64,000 nucleotides of DNA from NCBI RefSeq assembly GCF_006345805.1, contig NC_043025.1:372001-436000 (forward strand), written 5' to 3'. This DNA is from Octopus sinensis. Taxonomy: Eukaryota. The position numbers and the translations under genes are program-made. Below, in pieces: positions 15,088 to 49,984 of this stretch (the stretch's first letter is position 1; each line of letters begins with the position of its first letter). A model generated the notes under the pieces. That model searched no databases, was not told the origin of the DNA, and saw only the letters and a list, made by a program, of their open reading frames with translations.

Positions 15088-15093
15088 TTTATT
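15088..15093 (-). terminator. Candidate polyadenylation signal AATAAA of the PAN gene
   Basis: ~120 nt after the stop; conserved in the paralog at 42966-42971. Confidence 0.5.
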
Positions 15094-15214: not shown

Positions 15215-15405
15215 TCAGACCAGTTTCTTTAGTAGGCACTTAGTGTTAGTATATGAAAAGGCGGTACATGTAGAAGATACCATACATAAACGTGAACAAC
15301 CCAAGACCGAGCGAGCAACCATTTGGGCCTCGGTTATAAGGTTGTGATATGGATTTGGTTTGAAGGAAAAAGTTGAATAAGCCGTCAAATCATTAATTTC
15401 TTTTT
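15215..15405 (-). CDS. PAN/apple-domain gene, exon 4 (terminal; PAN3)
   Basis: Acceptor TTTTTTTATTGCAG|, phase 1; ...GCSRLCMVSSTCTAFSYTNTKCLLKKLV* fits C-x3-C-x5-C-x2-F-x-Y...C-L. Confidence 0.75.
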
Positions 15406-15824
15406 CTGCAATAAAAAAAGAAAGAGAAATCACAAGAATATAACTATATAAATGAAATTATTTCTCTTCATTGACAATGTACAAGGCAAACAAATAGATA
15501 GGGCCTATTGATTCGATAGATCGATGTTATTAATGTTCCGTTTGGACATCTTTAGGTTAGTGTGAGTAGGGAGTGAGTTCCTGAGTGTTGCATAATCTAG
15601 AAAGGAAGGATTAGGAATAATAATTGATGGGAGATCTGGCTGGTGAAATAGCATGTGTGACTGGAGAGTGAGAAGGGGCTTGTGGCTGGTTATCTCGGTG
15701 GTAGAGTGGTTCTCGTATTACCAGCGAGATGCATTAAGGTATTTCCGAGCAAGTTAGTAATGAAGCGTGTTGTGCTATTTAATGACAGTTAGGATTAATA
15801 TTAACCTATCTACCAGATTTTAAA

Positions 15825-17127
15825 TGAAGATGATGTATTAAACAGTTCCCGGACTAGTTCTGTAGCGCGCCAACAGATGGCAGCACACGGTTGAGTGCGC
15901 AGTAGGAGCTAGCAGTGATGGTGATGAGGCACTGGGATGAGTGATATTGCTGCGTTTACTTTGCAAGATGTGAAATTTTTGATATTGTAAGCTGCAATCT
16001 GCGATTTCGTGATGGGCAGGAGGTTGGAACAAAGAGCCAACGTGGAATTTGGCGTTAAATTTGGTACGACTTCTACAGAGACATTGATTATGCTTTGGCA
16101 AAATTACGGTAACGAGGGAATTGATTTTACGCAATGTTACGAGTGGCACGTGCTCTTCTAAAACAAAATAACATCCCTGGAAGACGAAGAGCGATCTGGA
16201 AGATTTACCACGGGCGTCACCCCAGGAGATTGGAGAAAATTCCTCAACTTGGGAATGATGATCGCCGGAGGACAATCAGCGACATTGATGATGTTGTTGG
16301 TCTGTCGTGTGGATTCGTACAGACAATCTTAACATCTGAACTGGACATCCGGTGTGTCTCTGCCAAGTTTGTCCCTCCTACTGAACAATCAGTAGAAAGA
16401 ACATTGCGTCAATGTCTGTCAAGATGTCAGTCAGCCTGCCGCTGTTGACTGATCCTTCATGTCAAGGATCATTATTGGTAATGAGAGTTGGATCCACAAA
16501 TACGACCCTGAGATGAAGCAGCAATTGTCACAATGGAAAATCCCTTCATCTCCACGACCTAAGACAGCAGGACAGAACCGCAGTTCAATCAAGAGCGTGC
16601 TGATCGTTTTTGTTTTCAACATCTGCATTATTGTGCATCAAGAATTCATCCCCCAGAGCCACACAGTGAATTGGCAGTTCTTACTACGACGTTTTGAGAA
16701 AGGACATTCGGCGAAACGACCGGTTATGCAGATCGCGAAAAACCGGATTCTTCATGGCCACAATGCACCCTGCTACCGAGTTCTCCTCACTCATGAATTT
16801 CTCGCCAAAAACTACACGGTATCGCTTCTACATCATCCCTATTCGTCACATTTAGCCGACTTCCTGCAGACATCCATCTCTTCCCCAAGACTAAAAGGCA
16901 ATCGAAAGGTCGCCATTTTAACACCTTTGTCCTTTTCCTGAACCGAATCGCAGATGGTCCTCGAGTCGCTTAAGGAAAACGACTTTCAGGTCGGATACCA
17001 AAAGTGGCAGGAACGCTGAGACCGGTCTATTTCCGCACAAGTCGACTATTCTGAAGGAGATGATGTGAAAACTTGGACAATTTATTTTTCAATAAACATA
17101 ACGGGAAGTTTTTGGTACCACTTCGTA
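15825..17127 (+). mobile_element. Decayed near-full-length mariner
   Basis: EQRANVEF, AKFVP, IGNESWIHKYDPE, HGHNAP, PYSSHLA; 3' TIR GGGAAGTTTTTGGTACCACTTCGTA. Confidence 0.9.
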
Positions 17128-17885
17128 ATTGTGGATCAGTTTTACTACATCTTTTAAAAAGGCTTATTAATTATTAAATTAATGCTAATCTATTTAACAA
17201 AGAATAAGTAGGACTAATAATGCGATGAAGAAGAAAGCGATATTTATTAATTTCTATATATTTTTTCGGCAAGAACTGGACACAGAAGATCAATGAATAA
17301 AAGATGAACAAGAAACAGAAACAAAGAACGCAAAAAATAAACAATAAAAATTGGTCTTACTGTCAAGAATATAATAAGAGTCGAAAACTCTTATACCACA
17401 TCCCACGGAGTTAATCTTCTCCAGTGTAAGGGACTGGTTAAGGTCATTCCAAAGTTCTGAAATGGAATAAAAGTAAAAAAGACCGTCGTAGTTTTAATGT
17501 TTTCCATGATTTCTTTAATATTAATCAAGGAATTCTAATCTCTTTCATACAATCGACTTTCCTATTTATATAAGACGATTTTATATAAGAAATCATGACT
17601 TTTTAAATATATGTTGTTTTATTTACTATCAGTTATTTCTAGTATTAACACAAGGCCTCATGTATGAAGGGAGGGAACAGACGTTTAGAAAGGTTCTACG
17701 ATGTTACTGGTGTGTTACCGATATATTATTTCATGTGTAATTAGACCGTATTGGAAAAAGAAAACCGATATTCTTCTTTGAGCGTTTGATGACTTATGTA
17801 GAGTATAAATGAATCATTTTTAACGTTGTATGCTATGTTTTAATATAGAAAAATAAACAATACAACACACAAGTCTGTCCTACAC

Positions 17886-18950
17886 ATGATAGCAGACGTT
17901 CGAGGTTACTCCTCAAGTTATCAACGCTTGGGCACTGAACGAGTTTGTGCAAAACACTTGTGTCCTTTGTACTCATCTCAAGCATACTTCAATTCACAAC
18001 GTTTTTATGTGGCGTGTATAGTTTATACCGAGCTAGTAGTGTCTACTAGTAGGACAACCAGGCCCAAAAATCTTTGGAAATTATCTCTGGGCTCCGGCTT
18101 GCAGGTAGAAGGGACCAGCCTGTTGACGTTTGCCGACACCCAGAGTCTTCTCGACAACGCCGTCGCTCTTTCTTTACCACAGTTCGACCGTAGAACGCCA
18201 AACTGGGGTTTCTGTATTGGTTGACTGGCAGAGGGTTGTGAGCGTCTGACTACACTCTAGATGTGTCAGAAAATCTGTCTTAGTCTACGTTTGATCCTGC
18301 TTGACTGTAACACTTCCAAAGAGACGAGCTGCGGAAAAGTGAGTCTGAGAAACGGCGACCACACCTGCTGAGTGCCAATCAAACTCTGGAGGTGTCGCAA
18401 CCGCAGCGCACGACTGCCCATCGTCAGCCAGGGTATGCCCAGTTTTCCATCTAGTAGGTGTCGACAGCAAATGGATCGTATGACGAGTGAAACGTGTGAA
18501 TTCCAAAGAATGCGGAAAGACAGGTGGCAATATATGATGGAAATGGTGTAAGCATTCGCCGCCTCTGTTCCACCTTCCAAGGATAACTTCTTCTCGGCTA
18601 ATTTCTGAGTAAAGTTGGTCACCCTGCTCTTTCCAGAGCTTCTCTACATGGAGATCTGGACGAAACCAGTTACCGAGTAATTTTCCCTACCCGTCCATCC
18701 AGCGCATAATGTTGTTGTTGGACTGATCGACCAACATCTCTAGGCACAGAGCTGCAGAACGAGTTTTGATGACACTGCCTCGTATTCCCGTAGAGGTTGC
18801 TGTCAGACTCTGTGACAATGCGTTTAATAAAGTTATAGTCCGAAAATTATCACGAGATTCCCGTTGTTCGGGTTACTTCCCAGCTGTGATACCACTGTCC
18901 TACTCACAGCAATGGGAATTACCCTGTTTTACAGTCATTCCTAGTTAATA
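17886..18950 (-). mobile_element. Tx1/L1-like LINE remnant
   Basis: AEKKLSLEGGTEAANAY...LRLRHL resembles the element at 1-1500. Confidence 0.75.
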
Positions 18951-19379
18951 TTTGTCAAGAGGTCTTCAAAGAAGTGTGGCATGCAAAAGTAAAATTCATA
19001 GGGCAGAACATCGAGACCAAGAGATTTTTTTCTCCAACATCCATTCAGTCAACCGTCAATCCCCGTATTTCAGCAGCCTTATCAGCTCTTGGCAGCACTC
19101 CGCCTACACACACACAGAGACTGGCATGCAGGAATACACACGTAGGTATGTCTGTACGTAAGTATGCATGTATGTATACGTGTATGTATACATGTATGTA
19201 TGTGTGTGCATATATGTGTGTATGTGCATGTATGTATGTACGTATATATGCATGCATGTACGTATATATGTATGTATGTATGCATGTACGTACCTATGTA
19301 TGTCGGCCACAGCCAGACACACAGTGTCCTTTCTCTTCCTTTCATGTGATATCCTGGGTCATCGTCGACAACAACGGAA

Positions 19380-21500
19380 GAACTAATAATGTATAGTATA
19401 ATAAAACCCATCCCAGAAGAAACGGAAGCTCGAAGATAATTAATGGGAAAATGGCAACAGAGGAAAGGCAGACATACTATCGGAACCAGGAAAAGTGAGA
19501 GCACAGAGCAATAAGGCAAAATAGAAGTCCACGGATGAAGAAATCCACGTAGAATTCAGCAGAACTAGGAATGGAAATGAGAAGAACTGAAATATCTTTG
19601 ACTCTGAGGTAAAGGCACCAACTAGATTTTTTTAATTCTGAAACTATCTTGGAAATGGAACACGTTGCCGACAACCGTCTCCTAAAGAAAAAAAAGAAAA
19701 ACACAAACAAATGATGCACGGACACAGTTCTATAGTGAGCAAGAGAACCAAAACCAGTTCTATTCTCAAGAAAAGCATAAAAGACCGATCCCAAACTTCA
19801 TTGTCACCTCTCGAATGAATGACATCGATATTTCACCAAAGGCCAAGCAATCTCTAAGTCGACATTACAATTTCCCTTCCTCATAAGGAGAAACAATCAA
19901 CGAAAACTAACCGAAAGACACCAAAGGAACCTAAATTCCAAAAAAGTCACTGAACAACCACTGACATATACATCAATGTTACCTGGACAAATGATTTGAA
20001 ATTAAGGTCAATAAAAACAGGTCCTGCACGTGAAGTCCACCGTCTCTAGAATTTTTTAGATATCCCCCTGAAGCCATTTCTCAAGTATATCAAAGCTTCG
20101 TAAGAGATGACCTAGATATTCTAAATCATTTCCCGAAAATACTCAACGAATAAACTTCGGTAGTATCTTTCAATGCAGTGAATTTTTATTTAAACTCCTT
20201 TCGCCGCTTGGGAATTGAGGTTATGCAATTCTTTTTGGTTAATAATATAGATGGACTCACCCATCGCATAAAAAGAAGAATTTATAATAGAGCGGCTAAA
20301 ATTTATTTCAGAAAATAATTACTTTACGCTCAATGCCAACATTTTCCGACAAAAAACTGGAACTGTCTGCGTTGCGACCGAAAACAGAACCCGCATTTGC
20401 GAATCTAGTAATTACACTATACTAAATAAAAAAAGAAAACATGAGGAAAATATGGAAACTCTTTCTCCATATACAACAAAAAAAAACTGGAAAAGCTCGA
20501 CGATTGCATCTTTCTTCGGAATGGAAGCTTAAGGAAGCTAAAAGAATTTGAAACACTCTTCAATAAAATTAAGGAAAATATTCAATTCAATATAGAATAT
20601 AGTCATAAACAATCTTCATTTTCGGAATTCCTTATGACGAATGTCTCAACCAAATAGAAATGGACATTTATTATAAACCAACGGACGCCAGACAATATCT
20701 TTCATTCAATTCATGCCATCAGAGGCATACCAGAATGAATGTCCCTTGTAACAAAGCTAAAAGTATTTGTACAATAGTATCTGATACAAACATCCGTGAC
20801 ATAAGACCCCCAAGAACGGAATGATGCATGTCTTGATAGGAATAATTCATATTAAATTCCATAACATGCAGTTACTGAAGAAAGACCGCAAATTAAGCCA
20901 AATCCTCCAGACAAACTATCTTAAAGAGTAATAGACAACTGAAATTAATAACAAAATATTTAACAAAGACCAAACTTCCCACAATAGCGATAAAAGAGAA
21001 AAAGAAGCGTAAAAAATGCGGAAGATTCAAATGTGGTTTATGTTTCAGTCTAAGAGAAGGGACAGAGAACCGTTTAGGCAAGGACAAGTCTTCACATTAA
21101 CAAAAATCTTTATTTCTGCAACTGAAAACTTAATCTAGGCAATAACATTCTCAGGATGTGTGACATTTTACATCGGATAGGCAAAAAACGTTTTAAGGCA
21201 TCGCATGAGCCTTCGTCGATCGGAAATTAAAATACAGGAATACAGAAGATAGGATTCAGTGAATATATAGAAACAGGCGCAAGCAGAAACAACCAAACTT
21301 TACGATGTTTTCTCTCAATGAATTTGGTGGTTATACAATTGAACGGCAATATACCAATGAAGAAATGTCTTTCATAACAAAATACTAAACGAGTCTAATT
21401 CATTTGGCAGAGAAAGGGAGGCAACAACAATCAACGAGAATACTGCAACCCTTATTTGGGTTACTATGGACATTGGGAAAACGTCTTAGAAAATTTTAAA
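19380..21500 (+). mobile_element. Penelope-like element (RT + GIY-YIG), decayed
   Basis: NNYFTLNANIFRQK, EPAFANL, KPTDARQYLSFNSCH, and a downstream GIY-YIG-like remnant. Confidence 0.75.
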
Positions 21501-21753
21501 GTACCACAAAAAACCGTTAGAAGGAAAAACTTTTAAATGCTGAGAAAACCTCTCAGATTTTCTGACAACGATTCACAAAATCTCGGAAAATATCAAAGAA
21601 TCTCAAAAGTGTTTTTGAAAAGTCTCAAAAGTTTTAATGTTCTAAAGTTTCAGAAGATTCAAAAAGATCCTGCATGTCAGACATAGAGGGGGAGATAGAC
21701 TGATAGAGAGGGAGGTAGATTGAGAGGGAAGTAGATATATAGATAAATTATAT

Positions 21754-22440
<687 letters not shown>

Positions 22441-22446
22441 ATATAT

Positions 22447-22504
<58 letters not shown>

Positions 22505-22510
22505 TATATA

Positions 22511-23297
22511 TACGTGGTCTCATCAGTAATTATCCAGACAGTGAAGCCGCTTGGCACAGATTGACCTTGAATACTAATCCGCAGGAGCACTAAGATTTAA
22601 CTCTCTAGCTCTATTCCGCTGTTTGCTGTTTACAGCAGTGTTTAGAAGGAAGGTGTGTAGCGAGTGATTGTCGTATTGACCATGACAGAACCTGCATAAA
22701 ATCTTGACAAAATCTTGGCAATACTGTTCAGAGGCCTCTGTAAAGTTTTCAAAATGGTTCATCGTTCTCGAGGATATCTTGTGCAACTGAAACCGAGTTT
22801 CTTGGCAGACACTCGTCTCATACCCAAATCCCCAGTGATAATGGACTAAACTAAACCGTAACTAATCTACACACATTCTGATAATTCAAGGATGCTGATT
22901 CGACGATTTCCCATCGCAGCTACACGCACATCTGCGATGCTTTCTTCAATTCTGCTGGTTGTGGGTCTCCCAGAACATTCGTCAATATAATATCGATATA
23001 TTTTCGGGCATCTTGCAAACGCCTGAATCACTCATACACTCCTCTACATACACTTACTGAAATTTTTCGTAGGCCTCTGAGCAGGTATCGCTGACAACTT
23101 TTCATGGTCAGTGAGACGATCACACGCTACACATGTTCCTTCCAAGCACTATTGTAAACAGTGGAAGTGAGATAGACGTTAAAATTTAGTGCGTATGCGC
23201 AGCAGAGCTCAAGGCCAACCTTTGCTGGGCGGCTTACTCTGAGTACTTTAGCCTCGTTACTATAACATCAGTCCGGATACTCATGGATCAGACCTAG

Positions 23298-23299
<2 letters not shown>
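22511..23299. mobile_element. Non-autonomous mariner-like element with TIRs
   Basis: TACGTGGTCTCATCAGTAATTATCCAGAC ... GTCCGGATACTCATGGATCAGACCTAGTA; TA flanks; paralog at 49441-49931. Confidence 0.7.
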
Positions 23300-23344
<45 letters not shown>

Positions 23345-23719
23345 CGGAGAGAGAGAGAGAGAGAGTGAGCGAGAGTGAGAGAGAAGACGTGGGGAGAGTG
23401 AGAGAGAGGAGTACAGCTAATTATATACACACGACGGTAAAAAAAGTATATAGATAAGTAGACAGTTAATTAGGTAGATAGGTTAGATAGTTCTATGAAT
23501 AGATGGATACATACATATATCAATCCAAGAACAAGCAATAAAAAACAACGCGAGGACGTGGAACAAGTACTGTGTTATTAGACGCTCAGAAAAGGAAAGA
23601 AAATGAAAGAGGAACTCACACTTCGAGCGGAGCTCTTCATCAAAGATATAGAAAAAGCCCAAAGACTTCCTACACATGTGCGTTGGAGAATGGTCAGTAG
23701 CAAGGTGTTTAACTTGTAG

Positions 23720-24359
23720 TTTGAAGTATGTGTGTGTATGCGTGTATGTATTTGTTGTGTGTGTCTGTGTGTGTGTGTGTGTTTGTGTGTGTGTGTATGC
23801 GTGACGTTGTGTGGGGGGATGTGTCTGTTGTGTAAATGTAAGTTACTCTGTGTGTGTGTGTGCGTGTGAGTGTATGTGCGTGTGTACACGTGTGTATATG
23901 TATGTGCGTGTGTATTTTGTGTGTGCATGTGTGTGTGCGTGTGTATGTTTGTATGTGTGTGAGAACGTTGGGTTGTGTGGGGAAGTATATGTGCGATTTT
24001 TTGCGCGTGTATGTGGGTGAGCGTGTGTATTTGTGTGTAGTTGTGTGTGCGTGTGTATATGTGAGTATATGTAAGCGGGTGTGGATACGTGTATGCGAGG
24101 GGTTGTGAGTGTTAGGTATGTGTGCATTCATGTGCGTGTGTGCGCGTGCGATGGCGTGCGCATGTGCGTGTGTGTGTATGTGCGCCTATATGTGTATGCG
24201 TATATGTATGTGTGTGCGTATATGTATGTTTGTGTATGAGTTTTTGTATCCGTGTGTGCGTAGGGTTGTGTGTGGCGTTTGTGTAGGGGCATATGTGCGT
24301 CCCTGTGTGTATGTGCGTGCGTGTGCTTACGTGCGTGTGTGCGTGTATATGCGTGTGTG
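23720..24359. repeat. GT/GC-rich degenerate dinucleotide tract
   Basis: Direct reading. Confidence 0.9.
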
Positions 24360-25020
24360 TATTAGGTTGTCAAGAAAGTTCTTGCGGTTTTTAGTCTTTA
24401 AATTCAGATGCACATATCTCGGTTCAAACAAAACTTTATTAATTGAATTAGACACCATCAGAATCAACCCACTTTTGCCAAGATTTTTTTATGCCAGTAG
24501 CGTAAAATCCTGTGTTCTGGTGGTGATGAAGTTGTTGAAAGCATGTTTGGCATTGTCTTGGCTTTTGAAGTATTTCTCACATAGGAAGTTGTCGAGATGC
24601 TTGAAAAAGTGGTAGTCGGTAGACGAGAGGTCTGGTGAGTATGGGGGATGAGGCAGAGTTTCGTAACCCAATTTGTTAAACTTCTGCAGGGTCAGCTGTG
24701 CGACGTGCGGCCAAGAGTTGTCGTGGAAAAGAATTGGTCCTTTTCTATTGACAAATGCTGGCTGTGATTATCGGAGTTTCTTATGTATTTCATCCATTTG
24801 CTGAGAGTACATCTCCGCTGTAATGGTTTCGTCTGGATCCAAAAAGCTGTGATGGAGGAGACCGGCCATAGACCATCAAACAGTCACCATGGCCTTCTTT
24901 TGGTACAACTTTGGCTTCGGGAATTGCCGTGGGGCTTCTTCGGCGTCCAACCACTGAGCTGAGCGTCGCCGGTTGTCGTAAAGAATCCACTTTTCATCGC
25001 GTTGATGGTGAGTGAAAGAT
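24360..25020 (-). mobile_element. Hsmar1-like mariner, 3' remnant
   Basis: TIR TTAGGTTGTCAAGAAAGTTCTTGCGGTTTT; GYETLPHPPYSPDLSSTDYHFFKHLDNFL. Confidence 0.85.
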
Positions 25021-25021
25021 A

Positions 25022-25340
25022 GTGTCTAAAGGTGAGGCTTCGTCTCATGATTTTGAAGAGGAGACCAGATCTTTTGGCCAGGATGTCAACCTCCGTGCTG
25101 TAAGCGAGAATGCCCTTCAACTGTATCACTTTTCTTGGCAAGCCTACTGTGAGCTCTCCTACCTGTCTTTTGGTGATCACCTCATCCCATCTACCTTTGG
25201 AGTCAAACAGAGTGACTCACTTGGTCCTTCTCTATTCACATTGGGTATTGGCAATGTTACCAAGATGATAGCCGACCTAGACTTAACTGTCTGGTACCTC
25301 GATGACGCTTGTTTGGAAGGCTCTCCTGACGAGTTGTTTG
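25022..25340 (+). mobile_element. CRE-clade-like RT fragment
   Basis: GVKQSDSLGPSLF...WYLDD; paralog at 50760-51052. Confidence 0.55.
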
Positions 25341-25807
25341 CAACTGGGAGGGCAATGAACGAGGAACTTGGTTGTAGGAACCTTGCATTTGTTGATTGCC
25401 CCTCGTTCTATCGTGGTTCATCCTTCGTCAGCCAGAGGCTATAGCAGAAGACTCCTGCTCGTGTTTCCAAGCAGTGGAACTGAACCCAGAAACATGTCGT
25501 TGGGGAGCAATCTCCTTACCATATAGTCACACATATATAAAACACACATATGCACACGCATACACAAACGCAAACATACACACGCAGACACACATATGTG
25601 AAACATGTGTGATCAATAGTTGTGCATTTGCTTAGTCCATCAATTGACATCTTTTATGGCCAAGTTGCACTCAATCATTTGGTAAAGAGTAAAGGAAACC
25701 ATTTAGGGGTGGCATAACAGTCTAAAGCTTTTCAAGGTGGTACCTCAGTACCGTCTAAATAGACTGGGACTAAAAGTAAAAAAATTATAAAACGAATTTG
25801 CACTTAC

Positions 25808-26038
25808 TTCTATTTATTTCAGTGTAAATGTCACCATCGAGGCGACTCAAACTTGCATGGGTATGGTTATAGGTTGACATGTAGCAAGCTTTCAAATGAA
25901 AGGTGTAGTCAAACGATTGACAGTTTGGTATTGCTTCACAAATGTAGAAACACTGCGTATAATTAACACCATACGTGACACCCAAAGTATTGCCACCAGA
26001 AATGTAACCGTTGTAAACAAAATCCACCGGACATTTTC
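25808..26038 (-). CDS. PAN/apple-domain gene, exon 3 (PAN2)
   Basis: TTTATTCTTTCAG| acceptor, |GTAAGT donor, 231 nt, phase 1-1, open; KCP...QCFYICEAIPNCQSFDY...ACYM. Confidence 0.85.
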
Positions 26039-26164
26039 CTGAAAGAATAAAATATAAATGAACGTTTTGGTTCGGTTTTCGTAATTGCGGTGGGCTGCTT
26101 TTATGGTGAAGTGTTTTATTGATTTAGATTAATGAGAAATAATAAGTATATAAAAATATTGGGT

Positions 26165-26328
26165 AAAGATATAATAATAACGATAATAATGATAATAATA
26201 ATGATAATAATAATGATAATAATAATGATAATAATGATAATAATTATGATAATAATATTAATAATAGTAAAAATAATAATATTAATAATAGTAAAAAAAA
26301 AAAAAAAATAATAATAATAATAATAATG

Positions 26329-26363
<35 letters not shown>

Positions 26364-26365
26364 AC
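26165..26365. repeat. (AAT)n array (Dong target)
   Basis: Direct reading. Confidence 0.95.
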
Positions 26366-26379
26366 ATCCAAAACAAAAT

Positions 26380-29177
26380 ACAAAAAATGAAAAAAAGATC
26401 TGTCGATTATTAATGAAATCAGCAAACAATCAACGCTACTGAGCAACAAAAAGAAAACAAAAATACTCCGCAAATATAACATCACGGAAAAAGATTTACC
26501 TGAGATAAAAGAAAAGCTGAAGCAAGATATCCTTGCCAAAGCACAAGAATCCGCCGGTATGAAAAACGCCAGCGCTTCTTTGAACAAAACAAAAAGTTCA
26601 ACTCCAACCCCAAAAAGTACCAAGAACTAGGCAAAAATAAAATAGAAATAACTGCAGCATCAGCGGCAGAAGAAGTGGAAGAATTCTGGAGAGAAATATG
26701 GTCGGCGAACGAACCACCAAAAAAAAGAGTATGAAAACAACAAACTCAGCATCTGAGCAACTTTGGACCCCCATAACAACCGAAGAGGTCACCCAGGCAC
26801 TGCAAAGACTAAGCAACTGGAAGGCACCTGGGCATGACAAGATCCCCAACTTCTGGTTGAAATATCTAACAGGAATGCACAAAAAGCTGGCTGAAAACTT
26901 TAACAACATACTAGCAGAGCCAGAGACAATGCCTGAATGGCTCACGAAGGGGAAAACCATCTTAATTCCCAAATCAAATGAGACAGCAAAACCAGAAAAC
27001 TACAGATCAATAACCTGTCTCCCTACTATGTACAAGGCATTTACTGCAGTGATATCGCAAAGGCTGAACAAGCACCTGAACGAAAACAAACTGTTTCCAG
27101 AAGAGCGGAAAGGATGCCGCAAAGGCTCATATGGCTGTAAAGATCAACTAATGATTAATAAAGCCATAACTGAAGACAGCCACAGAAAGAAGAAAGGCCT
27201 CAGTATGGCCTGGATCGACTACAAAAAGGCGTTTGATAGCATCCCCCCACACATGGATCCTCGAAACACTAGCCATTAACAAAGTAGCACCAATAATTAT
27301 AAAATTCATAGGCACTCTATGAATAAATGGCAAACAGTCCTACACCTCCAAACAAAAGAGAGACTCATGAAAACCAAAGACTTCCCCATTAGAAAAGGAA
27401 TATTCCAGGGAGACACGCTCTCTCCACTCCTTTTCTGCTTTGCACTGTCACCTCTATCTGATATGCTAAATAGAACTGGATGCGGATATAAATGTTACGG
27501 CAAAACGATCAGCCACCTTTTATATATGGATGACCTAAAACTATACGCTGCAAATGACAAACAGCTGGAAATACTATTAAAGACAGTTCATGGATTTACC
27601 AAAGAAATAGATATGAAATTTGGATTAGAAAAATGCGCCAAAGTAACCATGAAAAAAGGAAAACTAGTTAAGAGTAGCAACATCACACTAGATAAAACCA
27701 ATGAAATAAAAGAATTAGACCAAAGCCAAACTTACAAATACTTAGGAATCCATGAACTAGATAAGACACAACACACACAAATGAAAGAGAAAATAAAAAA
27801 CGAATATTATAGACGAGTTAGATCAATACTAAAAACAGAGCTCAATGCTAAAAACAAGATAATAGGTATCAACACTTTAGCTGTCCCAGTTATAAGTTAC
27901 AGCTACAATATCCTTAACTGGACACGAAATGAACTGTCCAAAATAGATAGGAAAACAAGAAAAATAATGACAGGATCTAGGATGCATCACCCAAAATCTG
28001 ACATAGAAAGACTATATATACAACGTATAGAAGGTGGTAGAGGCCTTATACAACTGGAAAACTACTATAAAATAACCACCATAGGACTGCAAAAATATCT
28101 ACTTCAGAAGGAAGGAAAACTGATACAAATAGCGGCAAAACACGAGCAAAACAAAACTGTACTCAGTATTTAAGGAAGCTGACAAATACAAACAAGAAAT
28201 CATACCACCTAATAAATATGAAGAAGAAGAAGAAGAAGAAGATGAAGAAACAACAAAAGCTATAAAACAAATGAAATCCAAACTAAAAATAGAACACCAA
28301 CGAACCATGATAAAACGATGGCAAGAAAAGCCCCTTCATGGTAAATACTGGACTAAACTAAACGCAAAAGAAATAGACAAAGAAAAATCCCAGCAATGGT
28401 TGAGAAGCTCAGGACTCAAAGCAGAAACAGAGGGATTTTTAATTGCAGCACAAGACCAAAGCCTCCCCACCAGGAATTACCAAAAACATGTAATGAAAAG
28501 AAATATACAAGTAACTGCAGAATATGTGGAGATGGACAAGAAACAATAAATCATATTATCTCTGGCTGCCCAGTCCTGGTTAAGAAGGAATATATTCACA
28601 GACATGACAGAGTTGGAACCTACATACATTGGAAGCTATGCCAACATTATGGAATAACAACAGAAAAAAGATGGTATAGGCACACACCAGAAAAGGTCAC
28701 AGAAAACGAGAAAGCAACCATACTCTGGGATATGCCGATACACACAGATAGAGAAATTAAGGCCAACAGGCCAGATATAGTTGTCAGAGATCATGAAGAA
28801 AAAAATGCTTTCTAATTGATGTATCAATACCGGCAGATGACAACGTGTCTCTAAAAGAAATGGAGAAACTCTCAAAATACAAAGACCTGGAAATAGAGGT
28901 AACCAGAATGTGGAATCTAAAAACCGAAACAATTCCTATCATAGTAGGTGCATTAGGCATGATAAAAAATATTCAGACAAATACATAACAAAAACACCAG
29001 GACTTACAAACACATATAACAAACAGAAAATTGCACTACTAGGCACTGTACACATCCTACGCAGAACACTTTCCATACAATAACCATCAGAGCATCACAA
29101 CAAATCACAGCACATACCCAAGGCACACAGAGCTGCACTCGGTAGTGAAGTGAAAACACGCTATAAAAATAAAACTA

Positions 29178-29180
<3 letters not shown>
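26380..29180 (+). mobile_element. R4/Dong-like RLE LINE, family A, 5'-truncated
   Basis: WKAPGHD, YRSITCL, WIDYKKAFDS, GIFQGDTLSP, YMDDLKLY, CRIC...H, RHD, RPDIVV...KY; 3' end joins (AAT)n. Confidence 0.9.
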
Positions 29181-29236
<56 letters not shown>

Positions 29237-29273
29237 TAATAACAATAATAATAATAATAATAATAACAATAAC

Positions 29274-31409
29274 AAAGGGTGCCGCCGAGGCTCTTACGGA
29301 TGCAAAGATCAACTGCTAATTAATCGTATGATCCTTGAGAACTGTCACAACAAGCGCAGAAATCTCAGCTCCTCATGGATTGACTATAAAACGTCGACAG
29401 TATACCGCATCCATGGATCTTGAGATCGCTGGACATCTTCAAAATTTCCCCTGTGATTTCAAACTTCCTGAAGCACAATATGTCGTTGTGGAATACGAAT
29501 CTCCAATTATACCACTCTAATGGAGTACTTGCCTCAGAAAATATAAACATCAACTGTGGAATTTTTCAAGGTGACTCACTTTCACCTTTAATATTCTGCA
29601 TAGCCCTAATACCCCTTACAAGTGAATTAAACAGAACAGGGTATGGGTATAAAATTGCCAATAAAAAAATAAGCCATCTATTTTATATGGATGACATAAA
29701 ACTTTATGGTAAAGACAATAATGAACTTGAAGGCCTATTGCGCACTGTGAAAGCATTCAGCGATGACATCGGGATGGAGTTTGGACTTGAGAAGTGTGCC
29801 AAGGCCACTTTCCAGAAAGGGAAAGTGAAGACCACAAATTCAGTCGTGTTAGATGTTGGCACAGTCATAAGAGAGCTTGAGCAAGAACAAACATACAAAT
29901 ATTTAGGGATAAATGAAGGCTCTGGTATTCAGCATGCAAGCATGAAAGAGAAGATCAGGAAGGAATGTTATAGGAGAGTTCGTGCAGTCCTGAAATCTGA
30001 ACAAAATGCTCGTAACAAGGTGTTAGCTATAAATTCCTTAGCAGTTCCAGTTGTTACTTATAACTACAATGTGTTGAACTGGAATATGAGTGAAGTAAAG
30101 AATATAGATAGGAAAATACGCAGGCTGCTGAGTTGTAATAGGATGCACCACCCAAAGGCAGACGTAGATCGCCTTTACCTTTCCAGAGCCCAAGGAGGTC
30201 GAGGCCTGATCCAATTTGAACTAGCTTACAAAACAACCACATTGGACTGGCCAAATATCTCGAAATAACGAATGACTGGATGCTAAAGCTCGTGGAAAAT
30301 CACGAGAGACGAAAGAAGCTTCATTCTATCATAAAGGAAAGCAAAAAATTTGCTATTGATCTCGTGCAGGATACCCAAACTGAACAACCCGAGGGAAGTA
30401 CGGCAACTATTGCTGCAAAGAAGGTGAAAATAATGGCAACGAAAAAAGAGCATGAGCAATTGGCTGATAGGTGGGAGGAGAAACCTCTGCACGGCAAATA
30501 TGTGGCCCGCAGCAAACAAGCTGATGTTGACCAGAAGCAAACCCATCAGTGGCTACGGAGCTCAGGGCTAAAAGCAGAGAGCGAAGGTTTCATCCTGGCT
30601 GCTTAAGATCAAAGCCTATTAACCCCGAACTACCAGGCCAATGTGATGAAAAATGGAGCAGACCCAAAATGCCGATTCTGCAACGACATGATTGAAACAG
30701 TGGACCACCTAATCTCTGGATGTAAAGTCTTAGCACCAGTGGAGTATAAATTAAGACATGACAGTGTTGGCCAATATCTACACTGGCTAATAAGTCGGCA
30801 TTACAATATCAAAACTGCCGACAAGTGATATAATCACCACCCTGAGGCTGTAACTGAAGGAGAAAATGTAACGATTCTGTGGGACTTTCCAGTACATACA
30901 GACCGAACCATCAAGGCCAATAAACCAGATATTGTTGTGAAAGACCAAAACAATAAAGTTTGCTTATTGATCGACATGAGCATCCCCTGTGATCATAATA
31001 TCTCAGCGAAAGAGTTTGACAAGCTCAGAAAATATAAAGACCTACTCATTGAAATTGAGAAAATGTGACATCTCAAGGCGGTTACAATACCAGTGATCGT
31101 AGGAGCACTAGGAATGATCAAGAAGGGAACCGAAAATTATATGAGAATGATCCCTGGCTTACCATCCCTGCAAGAAGTGCAAAAAATTGTCTTAACTGGT
31201 ACATCACACGTATTGAGAAGAGCATTATCGATGTGAGAACTGTTGCTGCTCATGTATTTTAATATAACTTTAAAAAAAATTAAAAAAATGAACGAACTAT
31301 TGATTTTGGTTTAATGGCCTACCAATGTATACTATGAGTTTCTTTGTCCTAGGAGTCGGGATGACACTCGGCAAGAAATGGAAGCAAATTTGAAAGAAGA
31401 AAAAAAAAG
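29274..31409 (+). mobile_element. R4/Dong-like LINE, family B, 5'-truncated
   Basis: GIFQGDSLSP, YMDD, CRFC, RHD, KPDIVV; (AAT)n on both sides; close to 60020-62153. Confidence 0.9.
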
Positions 31410-31422
31410 TAATGATAATAAA

Positions 31423-31468
<46 letters not shown>

Positions 31469-31483
31469 GTAATAATAATAATA

Positions 31484-31518
<35 letters not shown>

Positions 31519-31882
31519 TATTATTATTATTATATTATTACTATTATTGCAACAACACTAGTTTTCTATACTTGGACATAGAAACGATCTTGTTTAGAGA
31601 ATTTAAAACTTTAATATCTACAATTTTCTATGAAAATTTTACCCCTTTTTCCTTCCTGACTGCTCGAATATGCAAACATACCATTTATTGCAAGAAATTA
31701 AACGCACGATATAAATAAATGAGACCAACACCTGCCAATATATACAAACTGCACAATTACGAAAACTATAAACTACAGAAAAACCTATAAAAAGAAAATG
31801 AAAACATAAAAAATTATCCCGCCCCTAAACCGCATAAAATTTAAAAAATCAACGATGTGTGTGTGTGTATATATATATATAT

Positions 31883-32432
31883 ATACTAAGTAATTAAGGG
31901 TTTAGCAACGATTTGCCTCACCACAGACCGAATTTAGAAATAGCAGTCAAAGAGTTATAGCTATTCTTTCTACTAAAAGGGAGATCTCAGTAAAACCACA
32001 GCACTTGAAAGGCAAACACAGACAGGCAAGAGAGAAAGAAATGACGGCAATCTATCATACAATTTTAAGTCACCTACGGACGTACGTTTCGAAATTAAGT
32101 TTTAGGAAAGCATAAGATGCTTTCCTAAAACTTAATTTCGAAACGTACGTCCGTAGGTGACTTAAAATTGTATGATAGATTGCCGTCATTTCTTTCTCTC
32201 TTGCCTGTCTGTGTTTGCCTTTCAAGTGCTGTGGTTTTACTGAGATCTCCCTTTTAGTAGAAAGAATAGCTATAACTCTTTGACTGCTATTTCTAAATTC
32301 GGTCTGTGGTGAGGCAAATCGTTGCTAAACCCTTAATTACTTAGTATTACTTAAACTTTCCTCGAATGAGGCTTTTACATGCCGAAATCTACTTGGTGAA
32401 ATTAATGATTATTCCAAATTAATTGATTTCAC
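31883..32432. mobile_element. Perfect 231-bp-arm palindrome with hammerhead-like tail (Penelope-type)
   Basis: 31883-32113 is the exact reverse complement of 32117-32347, loop AAG; GA-GGC...GCC-GAAA follows. Confidence 0.75.
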
Positions 32433-32456
32433 CCTATATTATTACTGATATATATA

Positions 32457-32517
<61 letters not shown>

Positions 32518-32560
32518 ATACTATGTTATTATTATTATATTATTATTATTATTATTATTA

Positions 32561-32609
<49 letters not shown>

Positions 32610-32629
32610 TTTCTATCAATAATTAAAAA

Positions 32630-33315
32630 CAGAAGGTGAATTGTTTCTTTCCAATGCCAAGTTCAGCGCTCTCATTGATCGCTGGTTGTAGTAACACATT
32701 TGAAGTCTGTTGACTGCAAGCGTGTGACGTTTCTTTTGTTCCCTAATCGCACAGGAATGCGAGGCTCCATTGCTGATCTCCTCCTCACCATTTACAGACT
32801 TGTGGAATTTGGTCCATTTACCAAGCTGCTTCTCTTTCTCCTACTATCTCCTCAAACCCATACATATTTATGTTTATCTCAAGAACAAGACAACGTCGAA
32901 GTTAAACAACATTTAAGGAGCAAAGAGTGCATCTCAAGACGGTTACAATACCAGTGATTGTAGAAGCACTTGGGACGATCAAAAATGGAACTGAAAATTA
33001 TTTGAGAATGATACCTGGATTACCATCCCTGCAGGAAGCGCAAAATATTGTCTTAACTGGTATGTCACACGTATTGCGTATTGAGAAGAATATTGTCGAT
33101 GTGAAATTTCTTTCCCGTTTTGTCCTATATTTTTTCTGTTTACTGTTATATTTTATATCTTTTCTTATCTTTTTCTTCTACTTTTTTCTATCACATGACT
33201 TTGTAGCTGAACACTTTGGTGTGATTATTTTAAAGACCTATAAATGTATACAGTGCGTTTCTATGCTCCAGGTGTCAGGATGGCACTCAGCAAGAGAAGG
33301 AAACAGAATTGAAAG
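32630..33315. mobile_element. Inverted RT fragment fused to a Dong-like 3' end
   Basis: Minus-strand RT-like piece followed by plus-strand TVTIPVIVEALG...LTG; paralog at 57720-58415. Confidence 0.6.
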
Positions 33316-33989
33316 AAGATAATAATGAAAGTGATAATAATAATAATAATAATATAATAATAATAATAATAATAAGAAGAAGAAGAGAAGAAGAAGAAGA
33401 AGAAGAAGAAGAAGAAGAGAAGAAGAAGAAGAAGAAGAAGAATTAATGGAAACCATAACGAAACCAAGCAAAAGAACGGCGGTCGGTTAATCATAACTCT
33501 TGTAAGATGGTTGATTTAGAAGTCACACACAAACGCAAACACACACTCTACTATGCAACACCCCTCCAAAAACATACAAGAATAAACTCATACTGCAAAT
33601 ATCCAACAAAATTGACAAAACCCACAACATGTGTCATAGAAGGTTGATAACCGACAGAAGAAGACAACCTGCGCTACACAAACAACACACAAGATAAAAA
33701 CTAACAGAATCGAAGACTCAAAAAAAAGCCCATAAGAAAACGTACTGATACAATGCAATATCTCTTCCCCACCACCAATAAAATGCAGCATAGCACCCCA
33801 CCGTACAAAAGTACAACAACTGATGAAATAGAAAGATATTGAGAAATAATAGTGGTGATGACGATGGGGACGAACGTTACCTTACCTATGTTTATGAGAG
33901 ACAGGAGTTTCTGAAAAACTTGGTTGTAACAGCGAAAATGAAGCTGGGCCTTTAAGCGATGGCCTCTCGCTTGGTAGTGGTTCAGTAAA

Positions 33990-35760: not shown

Positions 35761-35769
35761 TATCAGTAC

Positions 35770-36900
35770 TAAAACAGTGGACCGTATTCACCAAGGAACT
35801 CACTTGTGTCTCAAATAGGCATCCGACCAATTCTTCAACGCGAAACAGGGAGGTTGAGTTGTCAGAGGTAAGGCACGAGCACTTAGACACGAAGGGACGA
35901 AAGCCGTTCAATGATCTGCAATGGTAGAGGCACAGTGTGGCAGTAAATCCACGATTCGATGCTTGCCGGGTCATGACGAACAAACGATAACTAATCCGTG
36001 ACAGATGTGTGCGGCCTTTCAGCAGCGCTTCGCCCAACAGTCCGAGAGTAGCGGTGAACCGAGTCACAGGATGGGTTTCACGTATTACCTCGACAGGATG
36101 CTGCAGCTCTCGACGACGAAGGCGGAGCACTGGGAAAGGCCGATAACAGCCTTTGCAATATGGGAAGCAATGGCTAACTACACGAGGTATAAATCGTCTG
36201 GTTTAGATGGTCTGCCCTACCAGTTTCACGCTTATACATCAGACTTGTTGGGCGACCTCTTAGCAAACGTTTACTGGAAGTGACGACAGAATGAAAGAAT
36301 TGTTAGTTTTGTGAGCCGAGGACCGGTGTCGTTGCTGAGGAAAAACACGAACAAGGGGAATTGTATTGACAACTCTAGGCCCATAACTCTGCTGAATGCA
36401 GAGTTGAAAAATTTTAGCGAAGCTGTTAGCTACGAGGTTGGCGCTTGTCGACTGGGATCTGGTAGGGGAGGCACAGACATACGTCATCCAGAAAAGATAT
36501 ATCACCGACAACCTTGACGTCATACGAGACATCACAAAGTTGTAAAGCTAAAGAATCGGGTATAGGTGGAACCCTGTTCAATTCAGATCAGTCTAAAGCT
36601 TTCGCTAGGGTCGACCACCTGCACCTGCCGGTGGCCGTCAAGGCATCTGATTTTGGGTCTGTATTGAGGGGCCGGAGAGATGCAATGCGCAGAGACATAT
36701 GTCCGGTGGTCCGAATGAACGGTAACTTCTCAGAACCGTTCAATATCAAGCGTTTGATCTGGCAAGGTTTCCGCCTCTCGTCTCCCTTGTATGTACCGAT
36801 TCTCGAGCAACTGCTACACAAACTGGAGACATTGAGTGACAAAACTTTAAAACTAGCTGAAATGAAAACGCTACACGTATTTTTTTATTTACAGACACCA
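35770..36900 (+). mobile_element. Tx1/L1-like RT remnant
   Basis: KSSGLDGLPYQF, RPITLLNAELK, DQSKAFARVDH. Confidence 0.7.
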
Positions 36901-37017
36901 TTCTACGTTGACAAGAGAAATCGTACAGACTTTTCAAATGCCGACAGTATTGTCTCTCTTTCGACTAAAACATAGAATACAAGTCAAAAAATGAAATAAA
37001 GATTCAAATTTGCTTAC

Positions 37018-37275
37018 CGTCTCTATACTCGGTCGGCACAGATCTTCTCAACTGATAAAAATTAGTATTAGTTGCTTCTTTTGGTATCCTTTCTGTTGAG
37101 TCATCTTCGTATAAAATACATCTTGGACTTATCGCTCTGCTCACGAAGGATTTACATGTAGAAATTTCCAAACACCTCTCCGCACAGCTGGAGACATCCA
37201 CATGAAGTGTCATCAATGTTTTACCGTCTTTCAGCGCACAGTGGTGTACTTTTATAAAATAGTTCAGATATTCAA
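37018..37275 (-). CDS. PAN/apple-domain gene, exon 2 (PAN1)
   Basis: TTTGTTACAG| acceptor, |GTAAGC donor, 258 nt, phase 1-1, open; HC...SCAERCLEISTCKSF...RCILY. Confidence 0.85.
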
Positions 37276-37820
37276 CTGTAACAAAGTCAGGAAAATTAAA
37301 CAACTAAAATAGGAAGAAGAAAATAAAAGATTGTGAAAATAGATAATAATATGCAAGTAGAATATTAAATGTTTCACGATCAACATGAATATTTTTGACA
37401 GGAAGAAGAGATGAAGTTGTTACTACCATAGTGTAGGTACAAAGCATCTTGGAATATATATATTTTTTAATGAAAATGACTGTGAATGAGTTTTTAAAGT
37501 TGTTTAATATTATTCTGTTATTTAAATGATTCACATGCTATGTTCTACAATGTTTAACGGTTGTATGTTGTAAAGTTTGCCCCAATGTCAGCACTTAGAC
37601 AAATTTAACAAAATGCTTCCGTTGGAAATTATGTCAAGAATTGAAATCACCATCATGCGGCTGTTGTATCTTAAAATCAGAATTTTAAATTTTCTTTCCA
37701 ACAAATTTATTTTGAGAAGGAAATCGTTTTCCTGTATTGAACTTATAAATCAAATATTTGTGTAGTGATTTTCACAATTTTCATACATATAAGTCTATAG
37801 ATTGATATAATTCTACTCAC

Positions 37821-37890
37821 GCCCATTTCCAAAATTCATTGAGAAGTAGAAGAGAACTGCAACGAAAATTTATTTTGTAAAATATTTCAT
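37821..37890 (-). CDS. PAN/apple-domain gene, exon 1 (signal peptide) with in-frame TAA at 37870-37872
   Basis: MKYFTK*IFVAVLFYFSMNFGNG, then phase-1 donor |GTGAGT; splices in frame to exon 2. Confidence 0.65.
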
Positions 37891-43086: not shown

Positions 43087-43277
43087 TCAGATCAGTTTCT
43101 TTAGTAGGCACTTAGTGTTAGTATATGAAAAGGCGGTACATGTAGAAGATACCATACATAAATGTGAACAATCCAAGACCGAGTGAGCATCCATTTGGGC
43201 ATCGGTTGCAAGGCTGAGATATGGATTTGGTTTGAATGAAAAAGTTGAATAAGCCGTCAAATCATTAATTTCTTTTT
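43087..43277 (-). CDS. Paralogous terminal PAN3 exon (gene copy B; may be a pseudogene)
   Basis: Same acceptor, length (191 nt) and stop as 15215-15405; 9 amino-acid differences, all Cys kept. Confidence 0.7.

Positions 43278-49953: not shown

Positions 49954-49984
<31 letters not shown>

What the first reader, a model, noticed from the sequence alone, without database searches (positions are those of the whole stretch)
15215..37890. Hidden 4-exon gene for a secreted triple-PAN/apple protein
Four small exons across 22.7 kb splice with canonical GT-AG sites, all phase 1, into ~250 aa: signal peptide, PAN1, PAN2, PAN3. PAN2 carries N-glycosylation sequons NYT and NHT. No catalytic or transmembrane domain is present. 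PAN domains mediate protein and carbohydrate binding. A PAN-only secreted protein in a tandem, diverging cluster suggests a lineage-specific recognition or effector family (immune, mucus, venom or reproductive; inference).
Basis: partly seen in the sequence, partly recalled or inferred. Interest (0 to 1): 0.75.

Follow-up and report, generated by a model that had tools for sequence, protein, structure and literature searches.

The report
Octopus secreted three-PAN-domain gene, six exons
The window holds a real, intact octopus gene for a small secreted protein made of three PAN/apple binding modules, but it has six coding exons rather than four, and it belongs to an octopus-only, tandemly duplicated, fast-evolving family that databases already list as uncharacterized.

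Summary
The core of the finding holds. On the minus strand, exons at 37018-37275, 25808-26038 and 15215-15405 encode PAN modules and splice GT-AG in phase 1. The sequons NYT and NHT are present.

- Its "signal-peptide exon" starts at an intronic ATG (37890) and has an in-frame TAA at codon 7. The real start is a 31-nt exon outside the stated range (39704-39734), spliced to a 36-nt exon (37821-37856).
- It misses a 96-nt exon (17361-17456) that supplies the N-terminal half of the third module.

The corrected six-exon model gives an intact 280-aa protein. The same structure gives intact 280- and 282-aa ORFs at the matching loci of Octopus bimaculoides and O. sinensis.

Pfam PAN_1 scores 56 bits. 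An AlphaFold model of the window's PAN2 exon (pLDDT 91) superposes on plasminogen, HGF and apicomplexan apple domains (TM 0.74-0.86). Close relatives come only from octopods, lie in tandem arrays and carry no function in databases or in the papers searched.

The coding sequence changes as fast as its flanks (dN/dS about 0.7) yet has no stops or indels, which points to selection.

Verdict: a new member of a known kind, of modest interest. What it binds is unknown.

The parts
39704..39734 (-). Coding exon 1: ATG at 39734, encodes MLHWNYLQFI plus one base, donor gtatgt.
   Evidence: Sequence read. It is conserved as ATG...ATTT|gtatgt in O. bimaculoides L001 10001-10031 (NCBI start of LOC128249715) and in O. 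sinensis L002 2690-2720.
37821..37856 (-). Coding exon 2, 36 nt, phase 1 to 1. It encodes (F)LFYFSMNFGNG, the end of the signal peptide. Acceptor cgttgcag, donor gtgagt.
   Evidence: The same exon is present in L001 12088-12123 and L002 9348-9383. The N-termini of homologues read ...IFLFYISLTFGNG|LEYL.
37857..37890 (-). ATG at 37890, in-frame TAA at 37870-37872.
   Evidence: Translation gives MKYFTK*. The same 'MKYFMK*' with a stop sits at the matching intronic position in O. bimaculoides (L001 12054).
37018..37275 (-). Coding exon 3, the PAN1 module (258 nt, phase 1 to 1).
   Evidence: Pfam PAN_1 28.3 bits and PAN_2 24.3 bits for the exon alone. Family HMM E = 9e-52. Splice sites.
25808..26038 (-). 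Coding exon 4, the PAN2 module (231 nt, phase 1 to 1). Carries the sequons NYT and NHT.
   Evidence: Pfam PAN_1 30.0 bits. AlphaFold2 pLDDT 90.8, pTM 0.80. Foldseek TM 0.74-0.86 to PAN/apple structures.
17361..17456 (-). It encodes LWNDLNQSLTLEKINSVGCGIRVFDSYYILD, the N-terminal half of module 3, and carries the sequon NQS.
   Evidence: tblastn with seven homologues, 65-79% identity. Acceptor ccatttcag and donor gtaaga. Family HMM E = 1e-16.
15215..15405 (-). Coding exon 6: the C-terminal half of module 3 (a truncated PAN) and the TGA stop at 15215-15217.
   Evidence: Pfam PAN_1 20.4 bits for the exon alone and 19.3 bits for exons 5+6 together, matching profile positions 17-53 of 76.
15088..15093 (-). 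AATAAA, a candidate polyadenylation signal 121 nt after the stop codon.
   Evidence: Pattern scan. This is a consensus match only.
45231..45326 (-). Copy B, a paralogous copy of exon 5 with intact frame and splice sites.
   Evidence: Family HMM E = 1e-15.
43087..43277 (-). Copy B, a paralogous copy of exon 6 with its own TGA. It is 84% identical in protein to exon 6 of the main gene.
   Evidence: It is closest to O. sinensis LOC118766692 (dN 0.046, dS 0.124).
41535..62294 (-). Tandem duplicate (copy B) of 14085-33374. It is colinear and mostly 82-98% identical, with the core blocks at 90-98% and the outermost block at 70%. The stretch that would hold the PAN2 exon (equivalent to 25330-27033) is absent, and any 5' exons would lie beyond the window.
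   Evidence: Self-blastn. The family HMM finds no other PAN exon anywhere in the window.
26698..30268 (+). Decayed non-LTR retrotransposon fragments (reverse-transcriptase ORFs) inside intron 3, antisense to the gene.
   Evidence: Pfam RVT_1 at 41-55 bits.

Best explanation
The locus is an intact minus-strand gene of six coding exons: 39704-39734, 37821-37856, 37018-37275, 25808-26038, 17361-17456 and 15215-15405. All introns are GT-AG and phase 1. It encodes a 280-aa precursor.

The precursor has a leader of about 22 residues (MLHWNYLQFIFLFYFSMNFGNG). Two complete PAN modules follow, then a third, C-terminally shortened PAN-like module. There are 15 cysteines and three N-glycosylation sequons. 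No catalytic domain, membrane span or anchor is present.

It is the counterpart of O. bimaculoides LOC128249715. It belongs to a family restricted to octopods (Octopus, Argonauta) and arranged in tandem arrays.

Inferred mechanism:
- The protein enters the secretory pathway, is disulfide-bonded and glycosylated, and is released.
- It then acts purely as an extracellular binder of a protein or glycan through its PAN modules.
- Its surface residues change quickly on a fixed cysteine scaffold.
- Because every module is bounded by phase-1 introns, modules can be lost, skipped or duplicated without breaking the frame.

Shown here: the gene structure, the PAN identity, the fold of module 2, the taxonomic restriction, the tandem duplication and the maintenance of the reading frame.

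Inferred only: secretion, glycosylation, disulfide pairing, the binding role and any physiological setting.
For: Structure:
- The corrected splice gives 843 nt, or 280 codons, with no stop. All five introns are gt...ag and phase 1.
- The same six exons with the same splice dinucleotides give intact 280-aa and 282-aa ORFs in O. bimaculoides (L001) and O. sinensis (L002).
- The corrected protein aligns end to end with O. sinensis LOC118766713 at 74% identity.

Orthology:
- The window is colinear with the LOC128249715 locus, mostly at 77-91% nucleotide identity and 84-89% in the larger blocks.

Selection:
- In the sequence around the exons there is about one gap opening per 95 nt, which predicts 8.9 indels in 843 nt. 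None is seen (P about 1e-4).
- Only 2.5% of neutral substitution simulations keep the ORF open.
- dN/dS is 0.72 overall, 0.43 in module 3 and 1.48 in module 1.

Domain identity:
- Pfam PAN_1 scores 56.4 bits with three stretches.
- AlphaFold2 of the window's PAN2 exon gives pLDDT 90.8.
- Foldseek matches the plasminogen PAp domain (TM 0.85-0.86, rmsd 1.6-1.7), the HGF N domain (0.80-0.82), SML-2 (0.74) and the FXI/prekallikrein and TgMIC4 apple domains.

No other domain or membrane span was found.

Family:
- There are 12-14 clusters, all from Octopus.
- The exhaustive search finds strong hits only in octopods.
- Tandem units are present in the window and in O. vulgaris.
Against: - No transcript evidence was available for this window, so the exon junctions rest on conservation and on homologous gene models.
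- The leader is only moderately hydrophobic (Kyte-Doolittle 1.2 over 15 residues). It lacks the basic residue that paralogues have, and no signal-peptide predictor could be run.
- Pairwise dN/dS values are not clearly below 1.
- PAN1 and PAN3 were modelled with low confidence (pLDDT 20-57).
- Module 3 alone falls below the Pfam threshold.
- The cysteine count of 15 is odd, so at least one thiol is unpaired or forms an intermolecular bond.
- Nothing tested here says what the protein binds.
Confidence: 0.82

Rival explanations
1. Translation would start at ATG 37890 and exon 5 would not be used, giving about 249 aa.
For: Three of its exons and all of its phases are correct. Skipping the 96-nt exon keeps the frame. 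Two database models (O. sinensis LOC118766702 and one O. vulgaris model) also lack that exon, so an isoform without exon 5 is possible.
Against: - There is an in-frame TAA seven codons after ATG 37890.
- The same stop is present at the matching position in O. bimaculoides.
- The N-termini of homologues match the upstream exon at 39704-39734 instead.
- Six of the nine homologue models that span the PAN2 to PAN3 junction include exon 5. One further model reads into a transposon instead.
Confidence: 0.03
2. The locus is a recently duplicated, unexpressed or decaying copy (a pseudogene) whose open frame survives by chance.
For: - The coding sequence differs from the O. bimaculoides counterpart by 12.5%, as much as the flanking sequence does (10.9%).
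- Overall dN/dS is 0.65-0.84.
- The neighbouring copy B has lost its PAN2 exon.
- No expression data were available.
Against: - There are no indels where about 9 are expected, and no stops.
- All ten splice dinucleotides are conserved in three genomes.
- The core cysteines are nearly invariant across the family.
- dN/dS is 0.43 in module 3.
Confidence: 0.1
3. The exons are part of a much larger multi-PAN gene, like the 1,730- and 2,643-aa octopus proteins with many PAN repeats, rather than a small stand-alone gene.
For: Large octopus proteins with 7-13 PAN stretches are the next-best hits (E = 1e-45 to 1e-52). Copy B's exons lie only 3.4 kb upstream on the same strand.
Against: - A conserved ATG exon with a hydrophobic leader and a conserved stop codon bound the unit in three species.
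- Full-length homologues are 276-282 aa.
- Copy B's last exon ends in its own TGA.
Confidence: 0.03

Closest known systems
Octopus bimaculoides LOC128249715 (XP_052830106.1), with the O. sinensis LOC118766692/766702/766704/766713 cluster and the O. bimaculoides 'Apple domain-containing protein' LOC106868906
   Same: - The genomic locus is colinear, mostly at 77-91% nucleotide identity.
- The six coding exons and the intron phases are the same.
- Protein identity is 75-77% to the re-spliced counterparts and 74% to LOC118766713.
- The layout is the same: leader, PAN, PAN, PAN-like.
   Different: - The window is from another, unidentified octopus species or paralogous locus. No database protein is more than 77% identical.
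- The public models at the compared loci differ from the structure found here. LOC128249715 ends in a transposon-derived exon, LOC118766692 lacks the first two exons, and the O. vulgaris model CAI9735246 fuses two tandem genes.
- None has an assigned function.
Apicomplexan microneme apple-domain lectins (Sarcocystis muris SML-2, PDB 2yil/2yio; Toxoplasma gondii MIC4, PDB 4a5v/2ll3)
   Same: - These are small secreted proteins built only of tandem PAN/apple modules that act by binding. The solved SML-2 complexes contain a galactose analogue (entry titles).
- SML-2 and MIC4 are among the five weak sequence matches in the PDB, and the only PAN/apple proteins among them (E = 0.13-0.48).
- The structural match has TM 0.69-0.74 at 22% identity.
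   Different: - There is no detectable common descent beyond the PAN superfamily.
- The sugar-contacting residues were not compared.
- The octopus modules lack the sixth cysteine of the apple subtype.
- The organism and biological setting are different.
PAN module of plasminogen (PAp) and N domain of hepatocyte growth factor
   Same: These give the best structural superposition of the window's PAN2 module: TM 0.80-0.86, rmsd 1.6-3.0 over 75-81 columns. They share the four-cysteine core.
   Different: In those proteins the PAN module is a single N-terminal appendage to kringle and protease domains. Here PAN modules are the whole protein. Sequence identity is 12-15%.
Leech anti-platelet protein (LAPP, PDB 1i8n)
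   Same: It is a small secreted invertebrate protein consisting essentially of one PAN module that works by binding alone. It appeared among the structural matches to the family model.
   Different: - It has a single module.
- The match is weak (E = 0.014, against a low-confidence whole-protein model).
- Nothing links the octopus gene to salivary tissue or to haemostasis. This is an analogy only.

Membership tests
PAN/apple domain superfamily (Pfam PAN_1 PF00024 and clan) | Profile-HMM match above the curated threshold | tested here: met
   The whole protein scores PAN_1 56.4 bits against a cut-off of 21.4, with three stretches. PAN1 alone scores 28.3 and PAN2 alone 30.0. Module 3 alone scores 19.3-20.4, just below the cut-off.
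PAN/apple domain superfamily | Four core cysteines spaced C-x3-C-x5-C-x9-11-C, which form two nested disulfides | tested here: met
   Cysteines at 53/57/63/75, 138/142/148/160 and 254/258/264/274. These are invariant or nearly invariant across the family alignments. The actual pairing is inferred, not shown.
PAN/apple domain superfamily | The fold: a curved antiparallel beta-sheet packed against one alpha-helix | tested here: met
   The window's PAN2 exon gives an AlphaFold2 model with pLDDT 90.8 and order b-b-a-b-b-b. TM is 0.74-0.86 to solved PAN/apple domains. For PAN1 and module 3 the model confidence was too low to judge.
Apple subtype (factor XI / prekallikrein type) | A third disulfide linking a first and a sixth cysteine at the two ends of the module | tested here: not met
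   Each module has five cysteines. There is an extra N-terminal one (C35, C111, C205) and no sixth after the core. C35 is replaced by Ala or Gly in some paralogues. 'PAN' is therefore the safer label than 'apple'.
Octopod small triple-PAN family (LOC128249715 / LOC118766713 group) | Leader plus three modules in about 280 aa, the same six-exon phase-1 structure, and a tandem genomic setting | tested here: met
   End-to-end alignment at 56-74% identity. Identical exon boundaries in L001 and L002. Synteny with L001. Tandem units in the window and in L003.
Secreted proteins with a cleaved signal peptide | An N-terminal hydrophobic core followed by small residues at positions -3 and -1, with no later membrane span | tested here: inconclusive
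   Residues 6-20 are the most hydrophobic N-terminal stretch (Kyte-Doolittle 1.2). G-N-G precedes the first module. No 19-residue window exceeds 1.1. The equivalent residues in the homologue were modelled as a helix, at very low confidence. No signal-peptide predictor was available.
Galactose-binding apple lectins (SML-2 / MIC4 type) | Conserved sugar-contacting residues in the binding pocket | not tested
   Only the overall fold was compared. Residue-level comparison with the ligand complexes was not done.

The most novel reading that the evidence does not exclude
The octopod-restricted triple-PAN family may be a diversifying recognition or effector system. One option is a secreted lectin-like pattern recogniser. 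Another is a salivary or reproductive binder comparable in logic to leech LAPP or to apicomplexan apple lectins. In that reading, tandem duplication, phase-1 module loss or skipping, and near-neutral or positive substitution rates on a fixed cysteine scaffold generate binding diversity. It would then be a cephalopod-specific invention of a variable binding repertoire.
Probability: 0.15. Interest if true: 0.55.

Novelty: new member of a known kind. Interest (0 to 1): 0.3.

Why it matters
- The work gives a corrected, cross-species-validated structure for a gene family whose public models at the three loci compared here are faulty.
- It shows the family is confined to octopods, tandemly amplified and evolving about as fast as non-coding DNA while keeping its frame. 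That pattern is usual for recognition, reproductive or secretion-borne proteins.
- It offers a defined candidate set for anyone studying octopus immunity, mucus, saliva or fertilisation.
- It does not overturn anything. PAN-only secreted proteins and phase-1 module shuffling are well known.

Tried and rejected
2. Further family exons were sought in the window by tblastn and by a family HMM against all six frames. Only the six segments reported were found, so copy B has no PAN1 or PAN2 here.
I folded the homologue P0001 instead, which gave a poor model (pLDDT 42.8). I then folded the window's own PAN2 exon, which gave a good model.
4. A sequence search of the PDB gave only marginal hits.
5. Seven literature searches by domain, taxon, gene and accession found nothing on this family.
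6. Species identification failed. An exact look-up of a window ORF found nothing. The loci from O. bimaculoides, O. sinensis and O. vulgaris are each mostly only 72-93% identical away from shared mobile elements.
7. A second profile search added only two more Octopus fragments.
8. A first dN/dS run on copy B used coordinates that were off by one. It was discarded and redone.
Full report
**What is in the sequence**

The feature lies on the minus strand.
- 37018-37275, 25808-26038 and 15215-15405 have AG acceptors; the two internal ones have GT donors.
- They join in phase 1.
- They encode cysteine-rich segments.

The NYT and NHT sequons lie in the middle exon. Pfam scores the spliced product at 57.4 bits for PAN_1 (cut-off 21.4) with three separate stretches, and reports no other kind of domain. 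The PAN observation is real and far beyond chance.

The proposed first exon (37821-37890) translates to MKYFTK*IFVAVLFYFSMNFGNG. A TAA at 37870-37872 interrupts it after six codons.

Homologues found in the protein database begin MLQRNCFQIIFLFYISLTLGNG|LEYL.... The closest gene is O. bimaculoides LOC128249715. I fetched its locus as L001.
- Its start codon lies in a separate 31-nt exon (ATG...ATTT|gtatgt).
- That exon is spliced to a 36-nt exon that begins after ...cattgcag.
- The 'MKYFMK*' pseudo-start, stop included, is also present there, inside the intron.

The window has the same two exons.
- ATGCTGCACTGGAATTACCTTCAATTTATTT|gtatgt lies at 39734-39704.
- TTCTCT...ATGGGC|gtgagt lies at 37856-37821.

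The real first coding exon is 1.8 kb outside the stated range.

**A missed exon**

tblastn with the homologues found a further segment, LWNDLNQSLTLEKINSVGCGIRVFDSYYILD, at 17361-17456. It is flanked by ccatttcag and gtaaga. Six of the nine homologue models that span the PAN2 to PAN3 junction include it.

**Corrected model**

| Exon | Coordinates | Length |
|---|---|---|
| 1 | 39704-39734 | 31 nt |
| 2 | 37821-37856 | 36 nt |
| 3 | 37018-37275 | 258 nt |
| 4 | 25808-26038 | 231 nt |
| 5 | 17361-17456 | 96 nt |
| 6 | 15215-15405 | 191 nt |

- The six exons sum to 843 nt and give an uninterrupted 280-aa protein.
- All five introns are GT-AG and phase 1.
- The protein aligns end to end with O. sinensis LOC118766713 at 74% identity.
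- An AATAAA lies 121 nt past the stop.

**Cross-species support**

The window is colinear with L001 over the whole gene, mostly at 77-91% nucleotide identity. All six exons are found in order in L001 and in the O. sinensis LOC118766692 locus (L002). Using the same boundaries, every splice dinucleotide is conserved. The ORFs are intact at 280 aa in O. bimaculoides and 282 aa in O. sinensis.

The public models at these loci differ from this structure.
- LOC128249715 leaves PAN2 for an exon inside a transposon-like ORF. That ORF also sits in the window's intron at 18291-18806.
- LOC118766692 starts inside PAN1.
- An O. vulgaris model fuses two complete tandem units.

**Is the frame maintained by selection?**

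- Between the window and L001, the aligned sequence around the exons has 0.0106 gap openings per nt. That predicts about 8.9 indels in 843 nt. The coding sequence has none (P about 1e-4).
- With the observed 105 substitutions placed at random, only 2.5% of simulations keep the ORF open.
- The coding sequence differs by 12.5%, against 10.9% for the flanks.
- dN/dS is 0.72 against O. bimaculoides and 0.65 against O. sinensis 692. By module it is 1.48 (PAN1), 0.66 (PAN2) and 0.43 (module 3), on small counts.

I read this as a constrained scaffold carrying rapidly changing surface residues. That reading is an inference.

**The protein**

- Residues 1-22 form a moderately hydrophobic leader ending in G-N-G. 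No later segment approaches membrane-span hydrophobicity. The mature protein would be about 29.5 kDa with pI 7.9.
- There are 15 cysteines. Each module has the PAN core pattern C-x3-C-x5-C-x9-11-C plus one extra N-terminal cysteine. None has the sixth cysteine of true apple domains.
- Module 3 ends six residues after its last cysteine. It matches only positions 17-53 of the 76-position PAN_1 profile and scores 19.3 bits alone, just under threshold. The protein is thus two full PAN modules plus a shortened PAN-like one.

The spliced protein could not be submitted for folding.
- The O. sinensis homologue folded poorly overall (pLDDT 42.8), apart from PAN2.
- The window's own PAN2 exon folded with pLDDT 90.8 and pTM 0.80.
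- It superposes on the plasminogen PAN module (TM 0.85-0.86, rmsd 1.6-1.7 Å), the HGF N domain (0.80-0.82), the Sarcocystis lectin SML-2 (0.74, 22% identity), and the factor XI/prekallikrein and Toxoplasma MIC4 apple domains.
- The whole-protein model hit the same set of structures.

**Family and distribution**

Word-indexed searches found 12-14 clusters, all from Octopus. They are named 'uncharacterized protein' or 'Apple domain-containing protein'. O. sinensis has at least four loci on one chromosome and about a dozen on unplaced scaffolds.

An exhaustive HMMER search of 1.84 billion representatives gave seven hits below 1e-30.
- All seven are octopod (Octopus species and Argonauta hians), including two very large multi-PAN proteins.
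- The next tier consists of generic PAN-repeat proteins from an annelid and from unnamed assemblies.
- Both octopod genera belong to Octopoda, Incirrata.

Seven literature searches found no paper on these genes.

**Surroundings**

- The window carries a tandem duplication. The segment 14085-33374 is repeated at 41535-62294, mostly at 82-98% identity.
- The copy keeps intact versions of exon 5 (45231-45326) and exon 6 (43087-43277), with splice sites and its own stop. These are closest to O. sinensis LOC118766692.
- The stretch that should hold the copy's PAN2 exon is missing. No other PAN exon exists anywhere in the window. Its 5' exons, if any, lie beyond 64 kb.
- The introns and flanks are full of decayed mobile elements: reverse transcriptase, endonuclease and mariner-type transposase.

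**How it most likely works**

The product most likely enters the secretory pathway and is disulfide-bonded and N-glycosylated. It would then act outside the cell only by binding, as other PAN-only proteins do. Phase-1 introns around every module allow module loss, skipping or duplication without frameshift; this is a textbook feature of shuffled extracellular modules (established knowledge). Which ligand it binds and in which tissue are unknown.

**Verdict**

This is a new member, with a corrected gene model, of an uncharacterized but already catalogued octopod PAN family. Interest is modest.

Noticed in passing
window 14085-33374 and 41535-62294: A tandem segmental duplication of about 20 kb, mostly 82-98% identical. 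It is more similar within the window (91% over 4.4 kb) than either copy is to O. bimaculoides (about 86%), so it probably arose after that split. The upstream copy has lost the stretch with the PAN2 exon next to a retrotransposon fragment.
   Followed up: partly
L001 (O. bimaculoides CM046617.1), L002 (O. sinensis CM016875.1), L003 (O. vulgaris OX597830.1): Public gene models of this family look wrong at all three loci. LOC128249715 ends in a transposon-derived exon although intact exons 5 and 6 lie downstream. LOC118766692 lacks exons 1-2, which are present upstream. O. vulgaris CAI9735246 fuses two complete tandem genes.
   Followed up: yes
window 18291-18806 (-) and 46117-46668 (-); weaker copy at 98-777 (+): A repeat-borne ORF with no Pfam match, similar to the tail of a retroelement ORF. 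It serves as the terminal coding exon in the NCBI model of LOC128249715. It sits in the same intron in the window.
   Followed up: partly
window 9546-12179 (+), 26698-30268 (+), 51494-54791 (+), 60075-61991 (+), 5087-5689 (+): Decayed mobile elements. Non-LTR retrotransposon pieces carry endonuclease (Exo_endo_phos) and reverse transcriptase (RVT_1) domains, and one mariner-type transposase fragment (Transposase_1) is present. Most lie on the strand opposite to the gene.
   Followed up: partly
window 62752-63327 (-); matches L001 6424-7948 at 87%: A 191-aa ORF whose sequence resembles a GIY-YIG nuclease module of Penelope-like retroelements. The resemblance is recalled from memory and was not tested. 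It probably explains a high-identity match between the window's end and the region upstream of the O. bimaculoides gene.
   Followed up: no
window 14672-14740 (-) and 42078-42155 (-): Short segments downstream of each exon-6 copy resemble the odd C-terminal tail of the O. sinensis LOC118766702 model (65-73% identity). This hints at an alternative 3' exon, or at a recurrent annotation artefact.
   Followed up: no
L001 2405-6321 (-): In O. bimaculoides an inverted partial paralogue (PAN2, exon 5 and exon 6; annotated as a 119-aa protein) lies head-to-head upstream of LOC128249715. At the corresponding place the window has a same-strand tandem copy. The array has therefore been rearranged between species.
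   Followed up: partly
window 19000-19400, 23500-24300, 26100-26450, 33240-33500, 62046-62501: Long microsatellite and low-complexity tracts: CA/TG-rich runs that read as His-Thr or Cys-Val repeats, and AT-rich runs. They produce many spurious ORFs in the mechanical ORF list.
   Followed up: no
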